Positions 5,739 through 33,595 of a stretch of 64,000 nucleotides of DNA are shown piece by piece. Origin of the DNA: Octopus sinensis (taxonomy: Eukaryota). Location: assembly GCF_006345805.1 (NCBI RefSeq), contig NC_043007.1:3038001-3102000 (forward strand). Reading direction: 5' to 3'. Within the stretch, counting starts at the first letter, position 1. Every line of letters begins with the position of its first letter. Both the position numbers and the translations under genes were made by a program. The notes beneath the pieces were generated by a model, which saw nothing but the letters and a program-made list of their open reading frames with translations, ran no database searches and was not told the DNA's origin.

Positions 5739-7517
5739 CCCATTAGAGTGCTGGTAAAGCTGATTTAGTCCGGCCCTTTGCGATCTAGGTACAAATTGTA
5801 GCGGTGTCATTCTTGCATGTCATCCTTCATTGTTCATTGGTATCTTTCATACACCCCGATCAATTTAATCGCTCCTACCTTCTCATAAATTTCTGACCAT
5901 GTGTCACAAACTGTTTATTATTAAGGTAATTCACTGAATATGTTATAACCTGAAATACACACTAACACCATCTAGGATGATACTACTTAGACACATCGCC
6001 TTTAAGATCTAGTATTTGGCTGCTTAGAAAACTAACCGTACATCAAATATTAAATATCGATTTCCCATTTCGTGAAATATAATTTTCTCAGCAAAATACA
6101 AATCATCGTTTTCAATATTTCCCTTGCTGTCGATAAATAATATACATTGTACTTGATTTATTTCTCTAATGTGTTCAATCCTCATTGAAAGCCAGAGCAA
6201 GGTTAAGATGTTCATATGTCTATTTCCAGCCATTCATCATGTTTTTTGTTCATTTTATTTTCAACTAATGTCTTTAATATTGATTCTATATATAAAGACT
6301 GATGCTTTAGAAGATCTGGCTGAGCATTGGACAAGATGCTTTGTAATTACATCACTTTATGTTTTGAGTTCAAATCCCATTGGACTGTCGCTGACTTTCG
6401 TTCGCCACTAGTCATTAAAGTAAATACCAGTTAAGTACTAAGACTCATGAAATCAATTATGCTATCTTCCTCCATTTGTATGATTTGGAGTGAGTAGTTG
6501 AAATCTTTATTTATGAACAATAATCTAGCGTTTTCTCTATAAACATAAACCGTGATATTAAATCCCACGTGAATAACTCGTTTTCCCTTGGCCCTGCACA
6601 AGTCAGTCACTATTTTTCTTCTCTTCCCACAACGACCGACGCCAGGAATACATTTCTCTAACCGTCTTTGCTCGGAAAAGTGTTAAAAATAACTGCAACT
6701 ATTTTATTGCCTTTTGCTTTTAGAACCTGTGAAGAATATAAACACGACCCCTTCTTCCAGACTTAACCATTTAAATAAAATACATGAATTGATCGGGCAT
6801 CACATGAAAATTTCAAGAACATGAATAGAGACTGGAAGAGGCTTGTCTGGTGGAAGTCGCATGACTTTAAGATAGCATTTATCTGAACTCAGTAAATCAA
6901 GCTAATGAAATAATTGTGAGGAAGTTTGGTTTTAATGATAAACTTTACGAATTCAATATTTTCTGTTAAGTGATCTTGACTATCACTTTGCATGAACGAT
7001 ATATCTCAATCAAGAGACACAATCAGTGACTACACTAGCAATGAATCCTTCGCTCGGCAATCCGGTTTTCCTACATAAGCTATCAAGGAATTGGTTAAGA
7101 TCATTGTTTATGTTCCAGGTCAGCTATGGGTAGACCTAAACACAAAGGCATTAAAACAGTGACCATCCGGTCCTTTACACAGACAACACATATTTAGTCC
7201 TACGCAGTCCATTGTATATTTCCAAGTGGGAAATAATTCAAGGTGCGATTTCCTTGATATTTCTATAATGTTGAAACTTTATCGTTGGATAAGAAGTTTA
7301 TTATTGGCCCAAATGATGATTTTATTCTGTTTTCTATTAAGATGGGTTCTACCAATGCAACATTCAAAATAAGTGCATTATAATTGAAATTGATGTTTGA
7401 TTTTTTAAACAAGGCAGAACATAAAATTCATCTCCTTCTGAATGAATTTATATTAATTTCAAACTCTGCTGTAATGTAACAGGAAGTCGAAATTGGATAT
7501 CAAAAATGATATGATTG

Positions 7518-8111
7518 TACAAGGGGAAGTAAAATATTCTCCGCACTTTCACTTTAGGTTAGTTACACTGCGTTCTGTGCGCGCTTGCTAAAAGGTGTTG
7601 CTCCTGGAGTTATGTAATCGCGGTTTGACTCGGGATGCTCTCGTTCTCTTTCTGATGTTACAGAGTAAACATGGTCGCTCCGCAGGCAGTGTGCACCATG
7701 GAAGAACACAGACGTGTATTGTCAAATTGAGTGTTATTTTTCCACGACAATGCACGTCCGTATATGGCCGCCAACGTGATTGAAACCATTGAAAAATTGG
7801 GTCTCGAGTTGCTGAAGCACCCTGCATACAATCCAGGCCTCACCCCTTAATTCTATCGTTTCTTTAGACTGCTCAAACATCCTTAACGAGGTCTTTGATT
7901 TGCTACGGTCAAAGAAGTACAGAAAGTGTTACGTAAATGGCCAGCCAAAAACATTCTCCTCCGATGGAATAAGCAAGCATGTGGACCGCTGGAAGCAGGG
8001 CACCAAAAAGCAACGAAACCATGTTGAAGATTATGTAATTGTTCAATCTCTGTTATTGTTTTAACAAATTACAGAAACTAGAAAGCGTATAATTTTTGGT
8101 TTACCTTCTTA
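7518..8111 (+). mobile_element. Internally deleted mariner (Tc1/mariner) transposon
   Basis: Degenerate TIRs TACAAGGGGAAGTAAAATATTCTCCGCACT and the reverse complement of AAAGCGTATAATTTTTGGTTTACCTTCTTA. The transposase N-terminus (MVAPQAVCTMEEHRRV) is joined directly to FHDNARPYMAANVIETIEKLGLELLKHPAYNPGLTP, matching the mariner HDNARPH and YSPDL motifs. Confidence 0.8.
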
Positions 8112-9238
8112 TTTTACTCCAGCATGGTAAACAGTTGTGTATGTTAAAGCGTTTAATAACAAATTGCAAAATATTTTGTGAATTAATTTTAGTAATTATT
8201 ACCATTTAAGGACTGAATTGGAGATATCTTAGACATGAGAAAATATCCTTCATAGTGTGAAGACCTAAAACAAACACTCTAAGTACTTGCTTTATGTAAA
8301 ACCGAGACAAATATATATAATGAGAGGTTGGTTTTCATATAATGCGGAAAAAAGATAAAAACGGCTATAATAACAATTTACGGCTTTTTCTTCTTCTTCA
8401 GATATTGTCGTTTAAATAAATTATTTATTAGTTTTCCATTTTTCCATTGACATTCACTAATTTTTATTACGATATATAAATGTTTCTTTTGTATCGGTTG
8501 TGCACTTCTGGTGCGGATCGCTTGAAGTTTTCCTTCGAAATATATATTTCATAGAATGTCAAAAAAAAGTTTGTCTTCAATCAAGTACGGTATGGTGATT
8601 TACATATATCGATATATTTGCCAAGAAACGATTACGCTAAAATAGACGACAACTAAACGGAGTTTCTTTAGTTCTTCAATGAATTATGGCACTCTTGGGA
8701 ATTGGTAATGCTAATTCTGCTTATTATAATTATCATCTTGTTCTTGTCTTTCGTGCCTTTGGTTTCTTCTTGTTATTTTATAGTTAGTGCCGATGCGTTT
8801 GATGTCGTATCTTGCTTTTAGTTCTTTTTTTCCTTTTCATTTCTTCGTCTTCTACTTCGACTCATTGTTTTTTCTTTTCGTATTTAAAAGTCTTCGTGAA
8901 TATAAAGTAACTAAAAGCAAAGAGCTGACCGAACTGGCGGAGAACACTTTTTAATATTTGGTTTCTAAACATCGTGTGTACTTCATAGTACTTCATAGTA
9001 AACACACACACACTCACACACACACACACACACACAAACTCACGCACACACACAAACACACACACACACACACTCACACACACTCACACACACACACACA
9101 CACACATATCTATATATATATATATAAAGATATATCTACATACATATTTATATAGTGGCCATTCCTCTAAATTTTGTATGTATATATATCTATATGTATG
9201 TGTGTGTGTGTGTGTGCGTGTGTGTGTCTGTGTGTATA

Positions 9239-9457
9239 CAGTAATCCCTGTCCCTATCGTGGTTAACAAATCACGGTTTATTATTTAAGCTAACGTCGAT
9301 TCCTCTGTGGTGTTGTTTTGCAATTACGATAATATAAATATATACGATTTATAAAAATAAAAAAATTAAAATATACAGTACTGTAGTTTTAACTTCGCGG
9401 ATTCTCAACCATCGAGGTGGGATTTAGAACGTAATACACGCGATAGTCGAAGGATTA

Positions 9458-9460
<3 letters not shown>
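9239..9460. mobile_element. Tigger/pogo-like MITE
   Basis: TIRs CAGTAATCCCTGTCCCTATCGTG and CGCGATAGTCGAAGGATTACTG, with TA on the left. Confidence 0.7.
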
Positions 9461-9555
<95 letters not shown>

Positions 9556-9604
9556 ATATATATATAATATATATATATATACATACATATAGATAGATAG
9601 ATAG

Positions 9605-9635
<31 letters not shown>

Positions 9636-9651
9636 CATACATACACATATA

Positions 9652-9699
<48 letters not shown>

Positions 9700-10025
9700 C
9701 GTGGCGCGTGGCTTAGTGGTTAGGTTATTCGGCCGACGATCGGAAGGTTGTGAGTTCGTTCCCAGTAGCACTTTGAGTCCTTGAGCAAGAGACTTTATTT
9801 CACGTTGGTCCAGTTCACTAAACTGGCAAAAGTCAGAAGCACTTGTATTTCAAAGGGCCAGGCCTGGTAAATTTTATGTATCATGCTGAATGTCCCTGAG
9901 AATTACGTTTAAAGGTACACGTTTCTGTGGTGTGCTCAGCCACTTACGCGTTAATTTAACGACCAGGATGTTCCGTTGATCGGATCAACTGGAACCCTTG
10001 CATTCGTAACCGACGGAGTACCGTT
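9700..10025 (+). mobile_element. SINE family C (tRNA-like head; body ...TATTTCAAAGGGCC...TGCTCAGCCACTT...CCGTTGATCGGATCAACTGGAACCC...GTAACCGACGGAG)
   Basis: Head GGCGCGTGGCTTAGTGGTTAGG...GAGTTCGTTCCC. The body is shared with 59990-60180 (reverse strand). Confidence 0.75.
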
Positions 10026-11526
10026 TATGCATATTACATATAATAGACCTGACTCTCTCACTCCTCTTGCAGCCACAACATGCAGAGCTTTGTCAAAATC
10101 TGTATCATCCTTTTAAGATTCATCGGCTTATTTCCATTTATATTTTATACATTGGCCATTCAGCCCACTTCATTGTCCCGTTGCCTTCACGCAATTATGT
10201 AACATCATTCCGCCATGTTGTTGCTTTTTTTAATATGTGCTTTCTTTTCGATTTTTAGATGAACAGGTTTTATTTATTGTACGTGTGTGTGTGTCGTCCT
10301 GATATGTATGGATAGCAAACAATCAAACTGTGAATATATAAAAATAATTCAGTTTTATGAGTGTATGGATTTGTTTTTATACAATTTCGTATATATTTTT
10401 AATAAGTTTGTATTTAAAATATATAATGCTTTATTTTATTTCTGCGTTACTTCGTGGGATATCTTGAGGTTTAGTAACTATTTCTCTCATCAGCCACTGT
10501 TCAACTAAAAATTGTGACAATGAGAGGATGTGTAATGTGACTAGTGGTGTATAACATTTGATAGTTTGTGTATGTATATATGTATATATTTACACGTGTA
10601 TGTGTGTTTGTATGATATCTGTTTGAGAACCGGTTGTGACTCGTTTGCATCCTCGAAACTTCGCGGTTTGACAAAACGACCCTATTTCCAGATTTTAAAA
10701 TAATAAGACTGAGATTAATGGGTTTTTTTTATTCAGCGCAGCAGGACGTTGCCCCAGCATGGCCGCAGTCCGATTAAACAGTTCCTAGATAAAAGATAGT
10801 GAAGAAACAATAGTTAGATATGCTTAGACATACGCAAGTTATACTTTAAAAAAGTTGCTGAACCAATAAAACTACGAATAGAATAGTCTTTTATACAATT
10901 TAAATCCGCATCAAATTTTTGGATGCTGTAGGTAGAATAGTTTACTGCCAAAGCCATGGCATTGATTATCCATAAATATCACAACAAGTGAAATCTAATT
11001 ATGTATTATATCATATTATACCATATTCCATTCCACAATAATCCGCATTTTATGTTATCAACAAAACCACACCACATCATATCGTATTACTCTAAATTAC
11101 CTAAAAGAATTTTATACGCTATCAGATATCAATCGAATTGAATGCCGTATCATACGATAATCCTCAATTTGTCTAAGAGAAATGTTGTATCTCTGAGACT
11201 GTCGACATCACGATTTTAATACTTATAATTAAAAGAAAAAGAAAACGGAAATAATTGTCCTCAAATGTCTACATAAAGTGTGAAATACTTGTCACACGTA
11301 TCTAGATCATTGGATGAATGTTCACGCTCACTTCTGTAAGATTTAACCTCACCCTTTAATCACAGAACAAACCGCAGCTCTTGACTTCACAAATAGTTGG
11401 TGTGCAAACCGCTGAAAATGAAATCGTGAGCGGAACGAAATTATCACCTCGAAAAAAGCTATTTTACAAAGGCATGCAAAACTCCTTATGAGTTCTTTGG
11501 TTTAGTTATATGTAATTTGTTTGACA

Positions 11527-20764: not shown

Positions 20765-20796
<32 letters not shown>

Positions 20797-20883
20797 GTAG
20801 GTCCCGGGTTGATTCGGGGTTAACCACAGTAAATAAGGTACTCAATACATAGCAGAGTAAAATTAATTTATTATTATAGAAGG

Positions 20884-20933
20884 AGCTTTACAGGACTAGA
20901 ACTGTTTCATTCAAGAGAAATCTTCAGGAAGCT
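20884..20933 (-). ncRNA. Hammerhead ribozyme motif, left-arm copy (lacks the G at position 1.1 of stem I)
   Basis: Reverse complement of the right-arm motif. It reads ...CTGTA-AAGCT rather than CTGTA-GAAGCT, so stem I is weakened (a real mutation or a consensus error). Confidence 0.65.
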
Positions 20934-21071
20934 AGTTAACAAGAATGTATTGGCATTTATACATTTAGGCAGGTTAAAGGGGTGTTGGTGGGGGACTTTT
21001 TGGGGGTAGGCATAGCGCAAAAAATCATATTGGGGGAGTGGTCAAGGAGTCAGTGTTAAATTAGATAGGAG

Positions 21072-21207
21072 AATAAAAAAAAAAAAATAAAAATAAAAAA
21101 TAAAAAATAAAAAAATAAAAATAAAAAATAAAAAATAAAAAATAAAAAATAAAAAATAAAAAATAAAAAAATAATAAAAAAATATAAAAAAATAAAAATA
21201 AAATATA

Positions 21208-21238
<31 letters not shown>

Positions 21239-22096
21239 TTATAAAGGGGGGAATAGAGTTTTAGGTAAATAAGGAGATTCTCACTTATACCTCTACACAT
21301 ACACACATATATACACTCACACATACATATACATATCTAACATACACATATATATTGTATACATACACACACTCACTTGCATACACGTATACACACATGT
21401 ATATATACACACACGACCACACATACATATACACACAGAAAAATATATATATATACACGTACACACACATACTCACATACACGCATACACACACAAATCC
21501 ATACACACACATGCACACACAGCACACTAGTCCCTATATACACATATATACACATACACATATATATACACCCACACATACACATACATACACATATATA
21601 TACATACATACACATACCCATACATATATATATACATACACATATATTATATATATATACACATATATATACATATGTGTACCCATGCATACCTACACAT
21701 ACACATATATATATATATATAATATACAAATACAGACCCATTCCCTAATTTTAATTTTATTATCTTCGTTTATTACTTTTGTTATCTTTGGCCGCTTGGT
21801 CACAAACATCTTGGCTATGACAGCCAGACCATTTATCCGTCTACTGGAAAACAAATTACTCATTCACTCACGCACACTCATTAGCACGTACACTCACTCA
21901 TTCGTACACTCATACGCATACACGCACGCACGCGTTATATTCATACATACGTACATCTACATACATTCACGTATATACACATACGTACGCGTACCTACAG
22001 ATTCATGTCTACACTCTTAGAAGGCTAGTCTATACATATACACCAATAAATATAAATACACACACATACATGTACACCTACATACAAATACATACA

Positions 22097-22149
<53 letters not shown>

Positions 22150-22280
22150 GCGTACCTACAGATTCATGTCTACACTCTTAGAAGGCTAGTCTATACATAT
22201 ACACCAATAAATATAAATACACACACACATATGTACACCTACATACAAATACATACATGTACTTATATACATACATACAC

Positions 22281-22324
<44 letters not shown>

Positions 22325-22511
22325 ATATATACATATATATACATAATATTATTCATACTAACATGCATACTCAAAAAAAAGTAAAAATAGTAAATATATA
22401 TACACGCAGTTATTCATACATGCATACTCAAAAAATAATAAATATAAGTATATGTACGTGCAGTTACCTATTATATAGACGGATACATACATATAATAAA
22501 AACTTACACAC

Positions 22512-22556
<45 letters not shown>

Positions 22557-22633
22557 CATATATACACACCAATATATATAAATAAATATAAATATATACA
22601 TACACACATACACCTACATATACACATACACAC

Positions 22634-22684
<51 letters not shown>

Positions 22685-22779
22685 TATATATACATATATA
22701 CACACACACATATATAAATATAAATATAAATATATACATACACACATACACCTACATATACACATACACACATACATAC

Positions 22780-22826
<47 letters not shown>

Positions 22827-23287
22827 TACACATACATATACATACACATACATACATATATATACAACGTACACATGTACATATACATATACCCATGCAC
22901 ACGCATATATATACACAAACATACACATACACACATGTATACACACACACTCACATACACATATATACATACACATATACATACACATACATATATATAT
23001 ATATGTATACATATATACATATATATAATATATATATATATACACACACATATACATACACACACACACATACACACACATTATATACACATGTGTGCAA
23101 ACATACATACATTCTCATACAAGCACACACACTTACATTTACATATATACACACACTTACACACATATATACATACACACATACATATTCACATACATAT
23201 GCATACACACAAATATACATATATACATACATACATCTATACATATATACACACACACCCAAACACACACGCACATACATATATATA

Positions 23288-23320
<33 letters not shown>

Positions 23321-23400
23321 CATATATATATATTTTTTTACATACATACACGCACACACACACATAATACATGCGTATAATCCTACTATACCCATACATT
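21072..23400. repeat. Low-complexity 3' region of the PLE left arm: (AAAAAT)n, (TA)n/(CA)n mosaic and internal tandem duplications
   Basis: (AAAAAT)n at ~21072-21215. A ~115-bp unit CGCGTACCTACAGATTCATG... occurs twice (~21988 and ~22148). All of this is mirrored in the right arm. Confidence 0.9.
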
Positions 23401-23401
23401 T

Positions 23402-25455
23402 CTATACATATATACGATACACATCTACAAGCGTGCACATACAATATGTGAAAGGTCTTAGGAGAAAAGGTAATCGGGGGTGGCTAGGGGAACGGTGGGA
23501 TTGGGGGGGTTTTGTGGGTGGTGGGGTGTCATCAATCTGGTGCCGGGTAGGTCTATAGTTCTTGTAGTTCGCATACTTCATATGCATACAATTTGGGGAG
23601 TGTTCTGAGATTTTGTTAAGGAGAGGGCCTTTGGCGAACAAGATCTCTAGGCTCTCCGATATGCAGAGGTCACAGCAGGTATGGCCTCCTGTGTATGAGC
23701 GCGCCTTCTGTAGTAGTTTCCACTTGGTCTTGAAGGGGATGGAATTCCTTTTAAGGTACCAGATGTGGGCGGCGAGGGTAGTTTGGTTGGATTTATCCTG
23801 TCGCCGGAACGAGTGTGTGTGTGCGTACCAACGGGTCTTAAAGCTGTTTGACGTCATTCCTATGTAGGATTTTCTTTTATCGTCAGGGCCTGATCTTACC
23901 TCGCATGTATATACTAGGTCCCTCTGTAGGCAGTTGTTGTTGAGGGGGCAGGTAGTTTATCAGGGCAGTTGCAATTGCTATCGGACGTTGGATGGGCCTC
24001 GGAAAAGTAGGTATGTTAAGTTTTTTCACATTGTTGTTGGCTAGGTTCCTGGCTAGATTGGGCGTGGTAGAGTAGGAGAGTCTAATAGTGTTCTTATTTA
24101 GGATAGTGTAGTACTTATGTTGGGTGGGAAGTGTTTCTGTAGGAGAGTGAAGAAGATTTTAGCTACAGGTGTAGCGACCTCACGGTTGAAGGGGGGGTTG
24201 TACCAGCTAATGTGTCTTCGTCTATTTTTCCTAGGTTGGCGTGGGGCTATACTAGTATAGGTAATCTTATCTTTGAAGCCACTGCGGGCCAGGGCCTCGT
24301 TGTAATAGGGGGCTGCGGCCTTAAAGATATCTTCCGTGGCGGACAGGCTAGAAATTCTAATTGAGACACTTTTTACTAGGTTATCTAATATATTTTTGGG
24401 GTGGTTGGAATTAATATCTATATATTTAAGGGATTCATTCGGTTTGTGGTACGGGTAATAAAGTGAGGTTTTTAAGTCGAGGGTGACATCAAGGAAGTTA
24501 GCTTTAGTTAAGTTGGATTCTAAGGTAATCCTAAGGCCTAAGTTTTAAAGAAGGTGTAAAGATTTTTCCGGAACCCATCCGTGGTCCTGGGGTTTACTTT
24601 GTGGAGGGCGAAAAGGCCGTCATCGCGGTAAAGACCACCGGAGAGGCCTGTGAATAGGGTTTTCAGCTATGGAGGATGAAAAGGCCCACTAGGTCACTTA
24701 TTTCAGCAGAGTCGTTAGCACCCATGCTGACGTCGAAGGGGGTCACAGATTTTTTGTTGATCCAGTGGGATCCGTCATAGAAAAGAAAAGTCTTACGTGC
24801 GTGGAGTATCACATTTGCTCGACCTCGGTGATGGTGGAAGACCTCCTGGCGAAGTTAATCGCGTCGATCAGCAAGCTCTCCGATATGGAGGCGTAGTAAT
24901 CCTCGATATCCAGTTGTAGGAATCGGGTGTTGCTTTTATCAGGTAAATCCTGGAACCAGGTTATTGCCTCGGAGGTCCTATTCCAGAGTGGAAGGGGTGA
25001 AGCTTCACGCATTTTTGGTAAAATCCTGTCCAGGATCTTCTTGCTGACGGATCCGATGTCAGACTTGGTTGGGTTAATCAAACGGACCGACGGTTTATTT
25101 TCGAAATGGTCTTTGTGGTCCTTCAGGGTGAAGTGTGGGGACTTCACCCTCAGGGGTTCGGTTCGGTCATCGATTTTAAGGGAGGTGGCAATCACTTTCC
25201 CGGCTAAATTGGTTTCAGTTAGCGCTGCGTCGTCTACTTTCTAGTACATAGCTGTGATGGCGTTATCGGCTAGTCTGTTGTAGGTGTCCGGAGTCACCGC
25301 GTAAATATTTTTTGTCTTGTCCGAAGGGACATGGAGGTTCTTGGAGCTTTTCATTTTCGAAAGCTTCTCATTCAGTTCCGTTTGGAAAGGTAAGTTGACT
25401 CTCCTGAATTTGATGTTTTTTATCATGAGGAAGAGGTCTTCTTCAAACGGTTCAA
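23402..25455 (-). pseudogene. PLE polyprotein, 5'-truncated (RT + GIY-YIG endonuclease), left arm; one in-frame TAG (25241-25243) and several frameshifts
   Basis: RT motifs QLDIEDYYASI, DVSMGANDSAEISDLVG and GLYRDDGL (24619-24630). Downstream are SNHP and ISWYNPPF, then KSYIGMTSNSFKTRWYAH (GIY-YIG second strand, YIG at 23858-23866) and C-terminal CDLCISE...LN...E...CMH. Stop codon at 23402-23404. Confidence 0.9.
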
Positions 25456-27287
25456 GTAGACGACGCAGCGCTAACTGAAACCAATTTAGCCGGGAAAGTG
25501 ATTGCCACCTCCCTTAAAATCGATGACCGAACCGAACCCCTGAGGGTGAAGTCCCCACACTTCACCCTGAAGGACCACAAAGACCATTTCGAAAATAAAC
25601 CGTCGGTTCGTTTGATTAACCCAACCAAGTCTGACATCGGATCCGTCAGCAAGAAGATCCTGGACAGGATTTTACCAAAAATGCGTGAAGCTTCACCCCT
25701 TCCACTCTGGAATAGGACCTCCGAGGCAATAACCTGGTTCCAGGATTTACCTGATAAAAGCAACACCCGATTCCTACAACTGGATATCGAGGATTACTAC
25801 GCCTCCATATCGGAGAGCTTGCTGATCGACGCGATTAACTTCGCCAGGAGGTCTTCCACCATCACCGAGGTCGAGCAAGATGTGATACTCCACGCACGAA
25901 TCCAGTAAGACTTTTCTTTCTATGACGGATCCCACTGGATCAACAAAAAATCTGTGACCCCCTTCGACGTCAGCATGGGTGCTAACGACTCTGCTGAAAT
26001 AAGTGACCTAGTGGGCCTTTTCATCCTCCATAGGCTGAAAACCCTATTCACAGGCCTCTCCGGTGGTCTTTACCGCGATGACGGCCTTTTCGCCCTCCAC
26101 AAAGTAAACCCCAGGACCACGGATGGGTTCCGGAAAAATCTTTACACCTTCTTTAAAAACTTAGGCCTTAGGATTACCAGAATCCAACTTAACTAAAGCT
26201 AACTTCCTTGATGTCACCCTCGACTTAAAAACCTCACTTTATTACCCGTACCACAAACCGAATGAATCCCTTAAATATATAGATATTAATTCCAACCACC
26301 CCAAAAATATATTAGATAACCTAGTAAAAAGTGTCTCAATTAGAATTTCTAGCCTGTCCGCCACGGAAGATATCTTTAAGGCCGCAGCCCCCTATACAAC
26401 GAGGCCCTGGCCCGCAGTGGCTTCAAGATAAGATTACCTATACTAGTATAGCCCCACGCCAACCTAGGAAAAATAGACGAAGACACATTAGCTGGTACAA
26501 CCCCCCCTTCAACCGTGAGGTCGCTACACCTGTAGCTAAAATCTTCTTCACTCTCCTACAGAAAACACTTCCCCACCCAACATAAGTACTACACTATCCT
26601 AAATAAGAACACTATTAGACTCTCCTACTCTACCACGCCCAATCTAGCCAGGAACCTAGCCAACAACAATGTGAAAAAACTAACATACCTACTTTTTCCG
26701 AGGCCCATCCAACGTCCGATAGCAATTGCAACTGCCCTGATAAAACTACCTGCCCCCTCAACAACAACTGCCTACAGAAGGACCTAGTATATACATGCGA
26801 GGTTAAGATCAGGCCCTGACGATAAAAGAAAATCCTACATAGGAATGACGTCAAACAGCTTTAAGACCCGTTGGTACGCACACACACACTCGTTCCGGCG
26901 ACAGGATAAAATCCAACCAAACTACCCTCGCCGCCCACATCTGGTACCTTAAAAGGAATTCCATCCCCTTCAAGACCAAGTGGAACTACTACAGAAGGCG
27001 CGCTCATACACAGGAGGCCATACCTGCTGTGACCTCTGCATATCGGAGAGCCTAGAGATCTTGTTCGCCAAAGGCCCTCTTCCTTAACAAAATCTCAGAA
27101 CACTCCCCAAATTGTATGCGAACTACAAGGAACTATAGACCTACCCGGCAACCAGATTGATGACACCCCCACCCACAAAACCCCCCCAATCCCACCGTTC
27201 CCCTAGCACCCCCGATTACCTTTTCTCCTAAGACCTTTCACATATTGTATGTGCACGCTTGTAGATGTGTATCGTATATATGTATAG
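25454..27287 (+). pseudogene. PLE polyprotein, 5'-truncated (RT + GIY-YIG endonuclease), right arm; frameshifted
   Basis: The same motifs on the + strand: LDIEDYY (~25780), YRDD at 26071-26082, CNCPDKTTCPLNNNCLQKDLVYTCEV (~26725-26805) and YIG at 26836-26844. Stop TAG at 27285-27287. Confidence 0.9.
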
Positions 27288-27289
27288 AA

Positions 27290-27361
27290 ATGTATGGGTT
27301 ATAGTAGGATTATACGCATGTATTATGTGTGTGTGTGCGTGTATGTATGTAAAAAAATATA

Positions 27362-27402
<41 letters not shown>

Positions 27403-27656
27403 TATATATATGTATGTGCGTGGATTGTGTGGGTGTGTGTGTGTGTGTATATATGTATAGATGTATGTATGTATATAGGTATATTTGTGTGTATGCATAT
27501 GTATGTGAATATGTATGTGGTATGTATATATATGTGTGTAAGTGTGTGTATATATGTAAATGTAAGTGTGTGTGCTTGTATGAGAATGTATGTATGTTTG
27601 CACACATGTGTATATATATGTGTGTGTATGTGTGTGTGTATGTATATGTGTGGATA

Positions 27657-27687
<31 letters not shown>

Positions 27688-28068
27688 ACACTATATATAT
27701 ATGTATGTGTATGTATATGTGTATGTATATATGTGTATGTGAGTGTGTGTGTATACATGTGTGTATGTGTATGTATGTATGTATATATATGCGTGTGCAT
27801 GGGTATATGTATATGTACATATGCGCGTACGCTCCGGTGTTTATTATGGTAGGTACGTAGAGTTATCTATGTGTGTATTTATATGTACATGTGTAAGTAT
27901 GTATATATATGTATGTATGTGTATGTATATGTATGTGTATGTGTGGTGTGTATATAATATATATAATTATATGTATGTATGTGTGTATGTGTCATGTAGG
28001 TGTATGTGTGTATGTATATATTTATATTTATATTTATATATGTGTGTGTGTTATATATGTATATATAG

Positions 28069-28122
<54 letters not shown>

Positions 28123-28386
28123 GTGTATGTGTATATGTAGGTGTATGTGTGTATGTATATATTTATATTTATTTATATATATATGTGTGTATATATGTAT
28201 ATATATATTTATATATATTATAATATATATATCTATGTGTGTAAGGTTATTAATGTGTATCCGTCTATATAATAGGTACTGCACGTACATATACTTAATA
28301 TTTATTATTTTTGAGTATGCATGTATGAATAACTGCGTGTATATATATTACTATTTACTTATTTTTGAGTATGCATGTTAGTATGA

Positions 28387-28418
<32 letters not shown>

Positions 28419-28612
28419 GTGTATATATTATATATATAAATATATATATATTATATAATATATATATATAATATATATATGTGTATGTATGTATATAAGT
28501 ACATGTATGTATTTGTATGTAGGTGTACATGTATGTGTGTGTATTTATATTTATTTGGTGTATATGTATAGACTAGCCTTCTAAGAGTGTAGACATGAAT
28601 CTGTAGGTACGC

Positions 28613-28673
<61 letters not shown>

Positions 28674-29525
28674 GTACATGTATGTATTTGTATGTAGGTG
28701 TACATGTATTGTGTGTATTTATATTTATTGGTGTATATGTATAGACTAGCCTTCTAAGAGTGTAGACATGAATCTGTAGGTACGCGTACGTATGTTGTAT
28801 ATACGTGAATGTATGTAGATGTACGTATGTATGAATATAACGCGTGCGTGCGTGTATGCGTATGAGTGTACGAATGAGTGAGTGTACGGCTAATGAGTGT
28901 GCGTGAGTGAATGAGTAATTGTTTTCCAGTAGACGGATAAATGGTCGGCTGTCATAGCAAGATGTTTGTGACCAAGCGGCAAAGATAACAAAAGTAATAA
29001 ACGAAGATAATAAAATTAAAATTAGGGAATGGGTCTGTATTTGTATATGTATATATATATATATGTGTGTATGTGTAGGTATGCATGGGTACACATATGT
29101 ATATATATGTGTATATATATATATATATATGTGTATGTATATATATATGTATGTGTATGTGTATGTATGTATATATATGTGTATGTATGTGTATGTGTGG
29201 GTGTATATATATGTGTGTATGTGTATATATGTGTATATAGGGACTAGTGTGCTGTGTGTGCATGTGTGTGTATGGATTTGTGTGTGTATGCGTATGTGAG
29301 TATGTGTGTGTACGTGGTATAATATATATATTTTTCTGTGTGTATATGTAGTGTGGTCGTGTGTGTATATATACATGGTGTATACGTGTATGCAAGTGAG
29401 TGTGTGTATGTATACATATATATGTGTATGTGTAGATATGTATGTATGTGTGAGTGTATATATGTGTGTATGTGTAGAGGTATAAGTGAGAATCTCCTTA
29501 TTTACCTAAAACTCTATTCCCCCTT

Positions 29526-29558
<33 letters not shown>

Positions 29559-29629
29559 TATTTATTTTTTTATTTTTATTTTTTTTATATTTTTGTATAT
29601 ATTTTTTTATTTTTTATTTTTTATTTTTA

Positions 29630-29660
<31 letters not shown>

Positions 29661-29702
29661 TATTTTTTATTTTTATTTTTATTTTTAATATTTTTTTTTT
29701 AT
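27290..29702. repeat. Low-complexity 3' region of the PLE right arm (mirror of 21072-23400)
   Basis: (TG/TA)n mosaic, the duplicated unit at ~28500-28620 and ~28680-28790, and (TTTTTA)n at ~29555-29702. Confidence 0.9.
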
Positions 29703-29844
29703 TCTCCTATCTAATTTAACACTGACTCCTTGACCACTCCCCCAAGTATGATTTTTTGCGCTATGCCTACCCCCAAAAAGTCCCCCACCAACACCCCTTT
29801 AAACCTGCCTAAATGTATAAATGCCAATACAATTCTTGTTAACT

Positions 29845-29895
29845 AGCTTCCTGAAGATTTCTCTTGAATGAAACAGTTCTAGTCCTGTAGAAGCT
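29845..29895 (+). ncRNA. Type I hammerhead ribozyme motif at the PLE 3' end (right arm)
   Basis: The sequence folds as AGCTTC-CTGAAGA-TTTC(TCTT)GAAT-GAAA-CAG(TTCTAGTC)CTG-TA-GAAGCT. It has a 6-bp stem I, a CUGANGA/GAAA core, a 4-bp stem III and a GUA cleavage triplet (cut after 29889). The stem II closing pair is a non-canonical U-U. Confidence 0.8.
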
Positions 29896-29912
29896 CCTTC
29901 TATATAATAAAT

Positions 29913-29951
<39 letters not shown>

Positions 29952-29954
29952 ATA

Positions 29955-29986
<32 letters not shown>

Positions 29987-31549: not shown

Positions 31550-31917
31550 GGAAATGATTCAGCCGACTACATCGACCCCAGTGCGTAACTGATACATATT
31601 TCTTTGACTTTGACCCCGGAAGGCTGAGAAGCAAAGTCGACCTCGGTGGAATTTGAACTCAGGACATACTGACGGGCAAAATACCTATTTCTTTATTACC
31701 CACAAGGGGCTAAACACAGAGGGGACAAACATGGACAGACATAGGTATTAAATCGATTACATCGATCCCAGTGCGTAACTGGTACTTAATTTATCGACCC
31801 CGAAAGGATGAAAGGCCAAGTCTACCTCGGCGGAATTTGAACTCACAACGTAACGGCAGACGAAATACCGCTAAGCATTTCGCCCGGCGTGCTAACGTTT
31901 CTGCTAGCTCGCCGCCT
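31550..31917 (-). mobile_element. SINE family B, dimeric form
   Basis: Reverse-complement match with two core units. Confidence 0.8.
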
Positions 31918-32930: not shown

Positions 32931-33595
32931 CTTGATAAATGTGCCAAGGCCACTTTCCAGAAATGAAAGTGAAGGCCTCACATCCAGTGGGTTTGGATGT
33001 TGACGCAGTCATAAAGGAACTCGAACAGGAACAAATTTACAAATACCTCGAAATAAATGAGGGCTCTGGCATTCAGCATGCAATTCTGAAAGAAAATATT
33101 AGGAAGGAGTGTTACAAGAGAGTCCGAGCAGTCCAAAAATCTGAGTTAAATGCACGTAACAAGGTGTTAGCAATAAATTCCTTATCAGTTTCGGTTGTTA
33201 TTCACAGTTTCAATGTGTTGAACTGGAATATGATCGCAATAAGGAAGATTGACGGGGAAATAAGTAAGCTGCTGGTTTGTAATAAGATACACCACCCAAA
33301 CGCAGACGAAGATCGTCTTTACCTATCCAAAGCTCAAGAAGGTCGAGGCTCGAACCAATTTGAAATCTTCTACAAAACCACCACAACTGCACTGGCGAAA
33401 TATCTCGAAGCATCTAACGACTGGATGCTAAAACGCATTGAAAACCATGAAAGACGTAAGAAGCTACATTCTGTTATGAAGGAGAGCGAAACATTTTCAA
33501 GTGAGTTTGTGCATAACACCCAGGATGGACAGCATGAGGAAAGTGCAAGAACTGTAATTACAAAGCAGATGAAATCAATAGCACAGTAGTGCTGA
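32931..33595 (+). mobile_element. R4/Dong-type (RLE-encoding) non-LTR retrotransposon, RT thumb fragment
   Basis: The ORF contains YKYLEI...KECYKRVRAVQKSELNARNKVLAIN...HHPNADEDRLYLSKAQEGRG, motifs typical of R4/NeSL-like elements. It directly abuts (TAA)n at 32885-32930. Confidence 0.75.

What the first reader, a model, noticed from the sequence alone, without database searches (positions are those of the whole stretch)
20797..29912. 9-kb perfect-type palindrome formed by a Penelope-like retroelement, capped by hammerhead ribozymes and inserted in (TA)n
Seen: two 5'-truncated RT + GIY-YIG copies point away from each other, with ~4.4-kb arms and a 214-bp spacer. The inverted repeat stops at the element ends, and unique DNA lies beyond the (TA)n flanks. 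Known: EN+ PLEs make tandem and inverted insertions, favour microsatellites and carry hammerheads, but inversions usually involve the short pseudo-LTR. Inference: here essentially the whole retrotransposed cDNA, including most of the ORF, is mirrored. Transcription through it would give a multi-kb dsRNA hairpin, a potential endo-siRNA source that silences its own family or a large ADAR substrate in an animal group known for heavy A-to-I editing. It would also be a cruciform-prone fragile site. The YRDD, MG-x2-D-x-AE-I and CxC-x5-CPL-x3-C motifs suggest a non-Penelope/Poseidon C-terminal-EN clade (possibly the Hydra clade), which needs a phylogeny.
Basis: partly seen in the sequence, partly recalled or inferred. 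Interest (0 to 1): 0.88.

Follow-up and report, generated by a model that had tools for sequence, protein, structure and literature searches.

The report
Mirror-image Penelope-like retrotransposon pair in octopus
Two mirror-image copies of a Hydra-clade Penelope-like retrotransposon, each missing its front end, are joined head to head inside a (TA)n microsatellite of an octopus genome; this is the normal insertion footprint of these elements, only longer than usual, so it is real but ordinary.

Summary
The palindrome is real in the sequence: 20866-25239 pairs with 25454-29912 at 92.7% over 4.5 kb. There is no true spacer. The 214 bases in the middle are the in-frame 5' continuation of the left (minus-strand) copy, and the two copies meet at a 6-nt microhomology.

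The element is a Hydra-clade Penelope-like element of Octopus. It shows the DKT, YRDD, CxCX5C, CxxC and CxH motifs, a telomerase-like RT fold, a GIY-YIG family endonuclease, (TA)n targets and a covarying type-I hammerhead near each outer end.

The left arm carries a 69-nt "tail" that the right arm lacks, which is a published PLE signature. Two other O. vulgaris loci and one locus from another species show the same head-to-head layout, the latter with 1.8-kb coding arms. The literature describes inverted 5'-truncated partners as typical and shows that a PLE protein extends both target strands in vitro.

The arms are long mainly because this family has a microsatellite-swollen 3' UTR and both copies are nearly full length.

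Nearly all arm differences in unique sequence are one-base homopolymer indels. These look like long-read consensus errors.

The dsRNA, siRNA, ADAR and fragile-site ideas remain untested. Verdict: a new member of a known kind, of low to moderate interest.

The parts
20772..20795 (.). Left target flank: (TA)n run, preceded by CA/TG/TA microsatellites from about 20550
   Evidence: Sequence read; TA-run scan
20797..25459 (-). Left copy of the Hydra-clade PLE. It is 5'-truncated by about 256 nt relative to the unit start seen in L001/L002. Its last 6 nt (25454-25459) are shared with the right copy.
   Evidence: Collinear alignment with L001 9902-12887 and L002 9902-12758, plus the tail; ORF translation
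20797..20865 (-). 'Tail': a 69-nt 3' extension ending ...GGGACCTAC, present on the left arm only
   Evidence: 100% identical to L001 8366-8439 and 94-96% identical to five other copies. It always ends at the same base, next to (TA)n or directly before the 5' UTR. Tail signature described in PMC8557442, PMC3846280 and PMC11167929.
20884..20933 (-). Hammerhead ribozyme motif of the left copy, with a one-base deletion just after the cleavage site that breaks the register of helix I
   Evidence: Model R1: 23 bits, E 3e-4; helix parsing
20934..23401 (-). Left-copy 3' UTR: (A5-6T)n tract, CA/TA microsatellites and unique islands
   Evidence: Mirrored in the right arm. Homology with L001/L002 runs about 900 nt past the stop codon.
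23402..23975 (-). Left-copy linker plus GIY-YIG endonuclease: LVYTCEV 23897-23917, SYIGMT 23852-23869, CDLC 23654-23674, CMH 23582-23590
   Evidence: Motif coordinates. 4159 relatives. 14 of 40 relatives hit Pfam GIY-YIG PF01541, best E 3.3e-5.
23976..25453 (-). Left-copy RT region, with about 6 frameshifts: DKT 25313-25324, LKDHK 25112-25126, YRDD 24616-24630
   Evidence: Homologue model best matches telomerase RT structures.
25240..25453 (-).
   Evidence: Translation ...LLEPFEEDLF...VPSDKTKNIYAV... continues into the arm. Collinear with L001 9896-10111.
25454..25459 (.). 5'-5' junction with a 6-nt microhomology: AAGTAG is the start of the right copy and the reverse complement of the left copy's first 6 nt (CTACTT)
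   Evidence: Comparison with the uninterrupted copies in L001/L002
25454..29915 (+). Right copy of the same PLE. It is 5'-truncated 214 nt further than the left copy and has a short-type 3' end without the tail.
25454..26700 (+). Right-copy RT region, with many frameshifts: LKDHK 25567-25581, MGANDSAEI 25975-26001, YRDD 26071-26085
26727..27240 (+). Right-copy linker CNCPDKTTCPLNNNC (26727-26771) and GIY-YIG endonuclease: LVYTCEV 26784-26804, SYIGMT 26833-26850, CDLC 27028-27048
27241..29844 (+). Right-copy microsatellite-rich 3' UTR
29845..29895 (+). Hammerhead ribozyme motif of the right copy. Type I: helix I 6 bp, core CUGAAGA, helix II 3 bp closed by U.U, GAAA, helix III 4 bp, cleavage after GUA at 29889.
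   Evidence: Model R1: 34.9 bits, E 8.3e-8, next unrelated hit 10.8 bits; helix parsing
29917..29986 (.). Right target flank: (TA)n runs, with unique DNA from about 30000

Best explanation
This is the product of one retrotransposition event of a Hydra-clade Penelope-like element into a (TA)n microsatellite of an Octopus genome.

Proposed steps:
1. The element's GIY-YIG endonuclease cut both strands of the TA repeat.
2. Each exposed 3' end primed reverse transcription of element RNA. One reaction started at the distal RT start site, giving the arm with the 69-nt tail that ends ...GGGACCTAC. The other started at the proximal AU-rich site, giving the arm that ends about ...CTTCTATA+15.
3. Both reactions copied the 3' pLTR with its hammerhead, the long microsatellite-rich 3' UTR, the endonuclease and most of the RT.
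4. The two antisense cDNAs stopped 214 nt apart, about 256 and 470 nt short of the unit's 5' end.
5. They annealed through a 6-nt complementary stretch (AAGTAG/CTACTT), and each was filled in on the other. The result is two outward-pointing copies joined 5' to 5'.

What is shown: the anatomy, the family identity, the two end types, the microhomology, and recurrence of the layout at other loci.

What is inferred: that both arms arose in one event, and that both target strands served as primers.

The locus is most likely an inert, fairly young, non-autonomous insertion. It has no 5' pLTR or promoter and no ORF start. Most of the apparent frameshifts and arm divergence are probably consensus errors of a long-read assembly.
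For: Identity:
- The best protein hits are Octopus vulgaris, at 89% and 72%.
- The family alignment shows RWK, DKT, a divergent RT4, YRDD, CxCX5C, GIY..YIG, CxxC-E and N-CxH. These match the Hydra-clade description in PMC8557442.
- An AlphaFold model of homologue P0072 (pLDDT 81) best matches TERT, with 3du5 at E 3e-10.
- Endonuclease relatives hit Pfam GIY-YIG.
- A hammerhead model built from other species finds only the two arm ends in the window.

Single-event head-to-head origin:
- Both outer ends abut (TA)n.
- The two ends are of the two 3'-end types that recur in L001/L002: the long end five times at the same base, and the short end three times.
- In each octopus head-to-head pair, only one arm has the tail. 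This matches the published 'tail at one end' signature.
- No target TA sequence lies between the 5' ends. Instead there is a 6-nt microhomology.
- The central 214 nt is ORF continuation.
- The arms differ by at most 0.65% in substitutions, whereas family copies differ by 4-13%.
- The same layout occurs at L001, L002 and L004.
- In vitro, a PLE protein cleaves and extends both target strands and uses two RT start sites that delimit the tail (PMC11167929).
Against: - There are no reads, no second assembly and no empty site, so the reality of the structure in the animal is inferred from internal consistency only.
- The evidence does not separate dual priming from cDNA snap-back. Near-identical arms and junction microhomology fit both.
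- The in vitro work used a Poseidon-clade element from a lizard, not a Hydra-clade one. It also found RT start sites that were not homologous to the target, whereas here both start sites lie at AU/UA-rich spots that could pair with a (TA)n primer.
- Only three octopus loci and six loci from other species were examined. Two of the six had no inverted partner and one had only direct repeats.
Confidence: 0.6

Rival explanations
1. One target strand primed a single cDNA. Its 3' end (…AAGTAG) folded back onto its own internal CTACTT 214 nt away and copied itself (self-priming, or snap-back). The second arm was then joined to the other side of the break in the TA repeat.
For: - The arms are nearly identical in substitutions.
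- The 6-nt complementarity lies exactly at the turn.
- The loop is the continuation of one copy.
- Arkhipova et al. 2013 infer a propensity of PLEs for self-priming from palindromes at inverted junctions.
Against: - A snap-back copy should reproduce the first arm's outer end, including the 69-nt tail, or stop at an arbitrary point. Instead the right arm ends at the family's other recurrent 3'-end type, which also terminates ordinary sense copies in L001 and L002.
- Arkhipova et al. note that self-priming on a sense template predicts tail-to-tail rather than head-to-head.
- Both-strand extension has been shown directly in vitro.
Confidence: 0.2
2. Assembly artefact. A fold-back or chimeric long read, or a mis-join between two separate copies of the element, created an inversion that does not exist in the animal.
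For: - Differences between the arms in unique sequence are dominated by one-base homopolymer indels: 16 of 23 gap events, against 13 mismatches. True paralogues show 246 substitutions to 9 gaps. The local consensus is therefore poor, and the region was hard to assemble or polish.
- PLE inverted structures are known to trouble assemblies.
Against: - A template-complement fold-back read gives a palindrome with no asymmetric centre and returns into the same flank. Here the centre holds 214 nt of one copy's ORF.
- The outer ends differ by a family-typical 69-nt tail.
- The two flanks are different unique DNA.
- The same architecture is present at two other chromosomes of O. vulgaris and in an unrelated assembly with 100% identical arms.
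- Poor polishing is expected for a true palindrome as well.
Confidence: 0.1
3. Two separate insertions: a second copy later landed in the opposite orientation right at the 5' end of the first. Alternatively, a single insertion was later duplicated in inverted orientation by a replication template switch.
For: - The element targets (TA)n, so repeated hits in one microsatellite are plausible. L001 has two pairs in a row separated by (TA)n.
- Inverted duplications by fork switching at microhomology are known in general.
Against: - No (TA)n target remains between the two 5' ends.
- The arms are far more alike than independent family members.
- A later inverted duplication would not be expected to begin and end exactly at element 3' ends of the two canonical types, or to leave the flanks unduplicated.
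Confidence: 0.07

Closest known systems
Hydra clade of C-terminal EN+ Penelope-like elements (Craig, Yushenova, Rodriguez and Arkhipova 2021, PMC8557442)
   Same: - DKT in place of DKG, and an RWK/RWR motif in the full-length octopus copies.
- A very divergent RT4, and YRDD.
- A CxCX5C linker, GIY-YIG without CCHH, and CxxC and CxH around the conserved E and N.
- Hammerhead present, insertion into (TA)n, and a single ORF.
- Molluscs are listed among the hosts.
   Different: - The published families are generally under 3 kb. This octopus family has units of about 3.3-4.9 kb, because its 3' UTR holds up to 2.4 kb of microsatellites and A-rich repeats.
- Its tail is about 69 nt rather than 30-40.
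- Placement in the RT tree was not tested.
Canonical PLE insertion architecture: pLTRs, an inverted 5'-truncated upstream copy, and a tail at one end (Evgen'ev and Arkhipova 2005 as cited in PMC8557442; Arkhipova et al. 2013, PMC3846280)
   Same: Head-to-head inverted partner, heavy use of 5' truncation, a tail on one end only, a hammerhead in the pLTR, and assembly difficulty.
   Different: In most drawn examples the inverted partner is a short pLTR next to a full-length copy. Here both partners are long and neither is full length, so there is no upstream direct pLTR.
PAc (Poseidon of Anolis carolinensis) in vitro reaction (Frangieh et al. 2024, PMC11167929)
   Same: It gives the mechanism that best fits the footprint: both DNA strands are cut and extended, there are two internal RT start sites whose interval equals the tail, and AT-rich targets are used.
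   Different: - It is a different clade and host.
- Its start sites were reported as not homologous to the target, whereas both octopus start sites lie at A/U-rich sequence that could pair with (TA)n.
- Joining of the two cDNAs was not reconstituted in vitro.
Twin priming of human LINE-1
   Same: The second target strand primes on the RNA, and the junction shows microhomology.
   Different: L1 twin priming inverts one part of a single copy without duplicating sequence. Here nearly the whole element is present twice.
Long inverted Pen3/Pen4 structures of the rotifer Adineta vaga, with small RNAs that switch polarity (PMC3846280)
   Same: Kilobase-scale inverted PLE arrangements that include ORF sequence. 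They are the only documented link between such structures and small RNAs.
   Different: They belong to a different clade. Small-RNA data exist for them and not here.

Membership tests
Penelope-like elements, EN+ type | Reverse transcriptase of the telomerase-related kind | tested here: met
   Pfam and PDB sequence searches find nothing. The AlphaFold model of homologue P0072 (30-sequence alignment, pLDDT 81, pTM 0.71) has telomerase RTs as its six best PDB matches, with 3du5 at E 3.2e-10. The YRDD catalytic motif is present in both arms.
Penelope-like elements, EN+ type | GIY-YIG endonuclease fused to the RT in one ORF | tested here: met
   The window's own domain does not hit Pfam. However, 14 of 40 close relatives hit PF01541 GIY-YIG, best E 3.3e-5. 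GIY (LVY), YIG, R, H, E and N align. Full-length relatives of 713-759 aa carry the domain at the C-terminus.
Penelope-like elements, EN+ type | pLTR organisation, frequent 5' truncation, an inverted 5'-truncated partner, and a tail at one end | tested here: met
   L001/L002 show a tail-bearing pLTR directly upstream of the ORF and again at the 3' end, with inverted partners. The window shows two truncated copies, with a tail on the left arm only.
Hydra clade | DKT instead of DKG; RWK motif near the N-terminus | tested here: met
   SDKT at 25313-25324. RWR in L001/L002 and MRWKA in 20 or more relatives. The window copies themselves are truncated before the RWK position.
Hydra clade | CxCX5C linker, no CCHH in the endonuclease, CxxC and CxH around the conserved E and N | tested here: met
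   CNCPDKTTC at 26727 onward, CDLCISE, and N...CMH. No CCHH pattern appears in the 40-sequence alignment.
Hydra clade | Insertion into (TA)n | tested here: met
   Window flanks; L001 and L002 ends.
Hydra clade | RT groups with Hydra references in a phylogeny against Penelope/Poseidon, Neptune, Nematis and Naiad | not testable with these tools
   No Repbase or supplementary reference sequences were available. The host spread of hits (cnidarian, echinoderm, mollusc) agrees with the clade's reported hosts but is not a tree.
Hammerhead ribozyme, type I | Core CUGANGA...GAAA...UH with helices I, II and III in the right places | tested here: met
   Parsing of 9 sequences. Across six non-octopus families, 89.6% of cells are paired, 10 of 13 pairs have changes on both sides, and 0 of 500 shuffles reach this. 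A model from those six finds the two octopus sites at E 8e-8 and 3e-4. Rfam models give no hit. The fold energy is no better than shuffles. Positions 10.1/11.1 are U.U rather than G-C.
Hammerhead ribozyme, type I | Self-cleavage activity | not testable with these tools
   This needs in vitro transcription. The left-arm copy has a one-base deletion next to the cleavage site.
Hairpin-RNA / endo-siRNA or ADAR-substrate locus | A transcript running through both arms; 21-24-nt small RNAs from both strands, or clustered A-to-G mismatches | not testable with these tools
   No expression data are available. Both copies lack the 5' pLTR. There is no sense-strand A-to-G excess among octopus copies, but that is not a test of editing at this locus.

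The most novel reading that the evidence does not exclude
The locus is a near-complete genomic 'fossil' of both-strand target-primed reverse transcription by a PLE. On this reading, two almost full-length cDNAs were started at the two alternative RT start sites on opposite strands of one cut and were sealed at a 6-nt microhomology. A genome-wide census of such pairs in octopus (offsets, tails, microhomologies) could then settle how PLEs complete integration. If the palindrome also lies in a transcribed intron, it could feed a long hairpin RNA into the siRNA or ADAR pathways of a heavily editing animal.
Probability: 0.35. Interest if true: 0.5.

Novelty: new member of a known kind. Interest (0 to 1): 0.25.

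Why it matters
The practical value is mostly for annotation and mechanism.

- **Annotation.** Hydra-clade PLEs escape Pfam, Rfam and PDB sequence searches. In O. vulgaris their fragments are annotated as "hypothetical predicted protein" inside gene models of 32-99 kb. Recognising the family, its two 3'-end types and its hammerhead would improve repeat masking in cephalopod genomes.
- **Mechanism.** The pairs carry readable information about how PLE integration is completed, a step not yet reconstituted in vitro: which RT start site each strand used, where each cDNA stopped, and what microhomology joined them.
- **Biology.** The structure itself does not challenge current knowledge. Its proposed roles in RNA silencing, editing or fragility are open but unsupported.

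Tried and rejected
- **Pfam.** Scans of the window's ORF pieces and of five relatives found no RT or GIY-YIG hit.
- **Rfam.** The gathering-threshold scan of the whole window and E<=10 scans of both ends found no hammerhead, only low-complexity miRNA-like noise.
- **PDB sequence and profile searches** for the RT and EN gave only chance-level hits at E>0.1, which I disregard.
- **Word-indexed protein searches.** The EN piece found nothing. The thumb region found 8 short non-octopus hits. No further octopus loci could therefore be collected.
- **Exact-product look-ups** of two window ORFs, meant to find the same or orthologous locus in public assemblies, found nothing on record. No empty-site or second-assembly test was therefore possible.
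- **Supplementary files** of Craig et al. are not held, so there were no reference Hydra sequences and no phylogeny.
- **The preprint on animal retrozymes** contains nothing on octopus or inverted structures.
- **Thermodynamic folding** of the hammerhead region gave z-scores near 0, which is uninformative for such a short motif.
- **ADAR-type A-to-G excess among copies.** None was seen. C/T differences outnumber A/G on the sense strand by 99 to 43, unpolarised.
- **My first hammerhead register** (cleavage at GUC 29882-29884) was rejected because helix I would not abut the core. The register with cleavage after GUA at 29889 gives contiguous helices and matches other families.

Full report
**1. 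The observation**

A self-comparison of 18-33 kb of the window pairs 20866-25239 with 29912-25454 at 92.7% identity over 4532 columns. The innermost 425 nt of each arm are 100% complementary, with 214 nt between them. No other copy of any part of the arms exists in the 64-kb window. The sequences outside the arms show no inverted similarity to each other beyond microsatellite noise. (TA)n runs lie at 20772-20795 and 29917-29986. The palindrome, its size, its position and its TA flanks are therefore confirmed.

**2. Anatomy**

Three-frame translation shows that the right arm (+ strand) and the left arm (- strand) encode the same protein, reading outward from the centre. The order is an RT region (LKDHK, RLINP, LDIEDYY, MGANDSAEI, YRDD), then a linker CNCPDKTTCPLNNNC, then an endonuclease (LVYTCEV...SYIGMT...R...H...CDLC-E...N...CMH).

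The 214 nt between the arms are not a spacer. Read on the minus strand, they continue the left copy's ORF upstream (...LLEPFEEDLF...VPSDKTKNIYAV...), with one stop. The locus is thus two copies truncated at points 214 nt apart.

Comparison with uninterrupted copies shows a shared 6-nt stretch at the junction. The first six bases of the right copy (AAGTAG, 25454-25459) are also the reverse complement of the first six bases of the left copy (CTACTT). This is a 6-nt microhomology, and no TA target sequence lies between the copies.

Only about 1.8-2.0 kb of each arm is coding. The outer 2.4 kb or so is a 3' UTR full of CA/TA microsatellites, an (A5-6T)n tract and a few unique islands. It ends in about 200 nt of unique sequence.

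**3. Relatives and element boundaries**

The RT piece has 847 relatives. The two best are Octopus vulgaris "hypothetical predicted proteins", at 89% and 72% identity. The rest are about 40% identical, and their names point to cnidarians, an echinoderm and a clam. I fetched the two octopus loci, L001 on OX597831.1 and L002 on OX597819.1.

Both loci hold a collinear copy of the element whose homology to the window runs about 900 nt beyond the stop codon into the microsatellite-rich region. Both also have the same terminal unique sequence further downstream, 0.86 kb (L002) and 2.25 kb (L001) after the ORF. The microsatellite-rich stretch is therefore part of the element, with variable length.

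The 69 nt at 20797-20865 have no partner in the right arm. They are 100% identical to L001 8366-8439 and 93-96% identical to five other sites. In L001 and L002 this stretch follows the terminal unique sequence and runs straight into the 5' UTR and the start codon of the ORF (MLTRIDL...RIRWRSFFF...). This is the classical PLE pseudo-LTR arrangement.

Two kinds of 3' end recur:
- A long end, always at ...GGGACCTAC.
- A short end at ...CTTCTATA plus 0-15 nt.

Both kinds abut (TA)n. In the window the left arm has the long end and the right arm the short one.

**4. Family assignment**

Sequence libraries fail to recognise the element:
- Pfam finds no RT or GIY-YIG in the window pieces or in five relatives.
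- PDB sequence and profile searches give only chance-level hits.

Other evidence is clear:
- An AlphaFold model of relative P0072, built from a 30-sequence alignment (pLDDT 81, pTM 0.71), has telomerase reverse transcriptases as its six best PDB matches (3du5, E 3.2e-10). Prokaryotic RTs and LINE-1 ORF2p follow. PLE RTs are the known sister group of TERT (PMC8557442).
- The endonuclease piece has 4159 relatives in an exhaustive HMMER search, including 713-759-aa proteins that carry it at the C-terminus.
- 14 of 40 of these relatives hit Pfam GIY-YIG, best E 3.3e-5.

Craig et al. 2021 define the Hydra clade by the following features:
- DKT instead of DKG.
- An RWK motif.
- A very divergent RT4.
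- A CxCX5C linker.
- No CCHH.
- Possible CxxC and CxH around the conserved E and N.
- Canonical hammerheads.
- (TA)n targets.
- Short single-ORF units.
- Hosts that include molluscs.

Every motif feature is present in the window or in its full-length octopus relatives. The unit length is the exception, discussed in section 6. A tree could not be built because no reference sequences were available.

**5. Hammerheads**

Rfam finds no hammerhead, even at E<=10 on 341-nt slices. The fold energy of the motif is no better than that of shuffled sequence.

The motif AGCUUC-CUGAAGA-UUUC(N4)GAAU-GAA-ACAG(N8)CUGU-A|GAAGCU is nevertheless present in all ten octopus copies. To test it, I fetched six loci of other Hydra-clade families from other assemblies, L003-L008. 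Each has a hammerhead core near its 3' end or upstream of its ORF.

All share the same type-I layout, with different but complementary helices. On an alignment of the six:
- 89.6% of cells are paired.
- 10 of 13 pairs have changes on both sides.
- No shuffle out of 500 reaches this.
- Slid registers drop to 26-47% paired.

A covariance model built from those six alone, run without filters on both strands of the window, gives exactly two significant hits. They are 29845-29895 (+) at 34.9 bits, E 8.3e-8, and 20884-20933 (-) at 23 bits, E 3.4e-4. The next hit scores 10.8 bits.

The hammerheads are real members of a clade-specific variant. Five of seven families have U.U at positions 10.1/11.1. 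The left-arm copy has a one-base deletion next to the cleavage site. Activity is untested, and Frangieh et al. 2024 found hammerhead cleavage dispensable for insertion in vitro.

**6. Is the mirrored arrangement unusual?**

It is not. The literature says so directly:
- Craig et al. [quoted passage not shown] - Arkhipova et al. 2013 call head-to-head the most frequently observed arrangement. [quoted passage not shown]

My own sample agrees:
- L001 holds two head-to-head pairs in a row. One is a miniature pair (137 nt antisense plus 62 nt sense, 8366-8564). The other is a truncated antisense copy facing a near-full-length sense copy.
- L002 holds one pair.
- In each pair one arm has the long, tailed end and the other the short end.
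- Among the six loci from other species, L004 is a palindrome of two coding copies, with arms 6231-8003 and 8448-10220 (1773 nt, 100% identical). The 444 nt between them are the 5' extension of one copy.
- L007 has short inverted pairs.
- L003 has no inverted partner and L005 has only direct repeats.

The window's arms are the longest seen, for two reasons. Both copies lost only about 256 and 470 nt at the 5' end, and this family's UTR is long. Units here are about 4.9 kb, against 3.3 kb in L002.

**7. Mechanism**

Frangieh et al. 2024 purified a PLE protein and showed three things. [quoted passage not shown] Reverse transcription starts at two adjacent internal sites. The genomic tail is the sequence between those sites.

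The window fits this point by point:
- Two outward-facing copies whose 3' ends each abut the TA target.
- One copy started at the distal site (with tail) and one at the proximal site (without).
- The 5' ends are joined by microhomology.

I therefore favour a single integration event with priming from both strands.

The main alternative within a single event is snap-back self-priming of one cDNA, which Arkhipova et al. 2013 discussed. It explains the microhomology and the near-identity of the arms equally well. It does not explain why the second arm ends at the family's other canonical 3' end.

Two independent insertions, or a later inverted duplication, are unlikely. There is no TA between the 5' ends, the flanks are not duplicated, and the arms are far more alike (at most 0.65% substitutions) than family members are (4-13%).

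One further inference of mine: both start sites lie at A/U-rich RNA (CUAC|AUAU and CUUCUAUA|AAAU) that could pair with a (TA)n primer. This differs from the non-homologous initiation reported for the lizard element.

**8. Quality of the sequence and the artefact question**

In the unique parts of the arms there are 13 mismatched columns and 23 gap events over 1995 ungapped columns. Sixteen of the gap events are single-base length changes of short homopolymers.

Between the window copy and L001 the ratio is the opposite: 246 substitutions to 9 gap events. At most indel columns the left arm agrees with L001/L002 (28 columns against 6), so the right arm carries most of the changes.

This is the error signature of uncorrected long reads in a region that short reads cannot polish. 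The many frameshifts and part of the 7% arm divergence should not be read as decay.

Poor consensus quality raises the question of a fold-back artefact. Several observations argue against it:
- The asymmetric 214-nt coding centre.
- The asymmetric, family-typical outer ends.
- The two different unique flanks.
- Recurrence of the layout on other chromosomes and in another assembly.

I put the artefact at about 10%. Only reads can settle it.

**9.

Nothing here tests the dsRNA hairpin, endo-siRNA, ADAR or cruciform ideas. Both copies lack the 5' pLTR, where PLE promoters lie (PMC8557442, PMC2377424 as cited), and they point outward. A hairpin RNA would therefore need read-through from a host promoter, and the window gives no evidence on transcription. 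Among the octopus copies there is no excess of sense-strand A-to-G differences. The rotifer small-RNA result shows that the idea is reasonable, and also that it is not new.

**10. Verdict**

The locus is a confirmed 9.1-kb head-to-head pair of a Hydra-clade Penelope-like element in an Octopus (TA)n microsatellite. It carries clade-typical hammerheads and a one-sided tail. It is a long but otherwise standard example of a documented insertion architecture: a new member of a known kind, with interest of about 0.25. Its best use is as material for a census of such pairs, to work out how PLE integration is completed.

Noticed in passing
L008 4016-7994 and 11266-15244: A 3979-nt inverted repeat (99.9% identical) brackets a Hydra-clade PLE from another species. 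The left arm ends 6 nt before the ORF start at 8001, and the arms have no called genes. Either the PLE inserted at the centre of an existing palindrome, or its insertion duplicated host DNA in inverted orientation.
   Followed up: no
L004 6231-10220: A second whole-ORF palindrome of a different Hydra-clade family in an unrelated assembly. It has 1773-nt arms at 100% identity, a 444-nt offset that is the 5' extension of the + copy, hammerheads at both outer ends, and only short TATATA at the ends.
   Followed up: partly
Hammerheads in window 29845-29895, L003 7789, L005 14369, L006 11280, L008 10087: Five of seven Hydra-clade families have U.U at hammerhead positions 10.1/11.1, where G-C is usual. 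Rfam's hammerhead models missed both window copies. This may be a clade-specific variant worth a curated model and an activity test.
   Followed up: partly
Window 23390-25239 versus 25454-27300: Arm differences are dominated by one-base homopolymer indels, mostly extra bases in the right arm. This points to locally poor long-read consensus. There is also a 13-nt deletion in the right arm (left coordinates 23571-23583) between GCATAC direct repeats.
   Followed up: yes
L001 10001-41913 and L002 10001-108631: The O. vulgaris annotation turns fragments of this retrotransposon into 'hypothetical predicted protein' gene models that span 32 kb and 99 kb. Pfam does not recognise the RT or EN of this clade, so such elements probably escape masking.
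   Followed up: partly
Window 31557-31870: Two adjacent direct repeat units, 78-79% identical, containing ...GGTGGAATTTGAACTCAG.... They look like SINE copies (families D15 and D16).
   Followed up: no
Window 32939-33589 (+): An isolated 216-aa ORF about 3 kb to the right of the palindrome. No gene with exactly this product is on record, and its family was not examined.
   Followed up: no
L007 10673-11179: A self-palindromic stretch carrying two facing hammerheads (10958 + and 10917 -). This is a miniature head-to-head pair of yet another Hydra-clade family. Other, differently built hammerhead cores lie nearby (13378, 14465, 10655).
   Followed up: no
Octopus copies: window left arm versus L001/L002, coding part: On the sense strand, C/T differences are about twice as frequent as A/G differences (99 against 43, unpolarised). 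The cause is unknown; base composition, CpG decay or strand-specific editing are possibilities.
   Followed up: no
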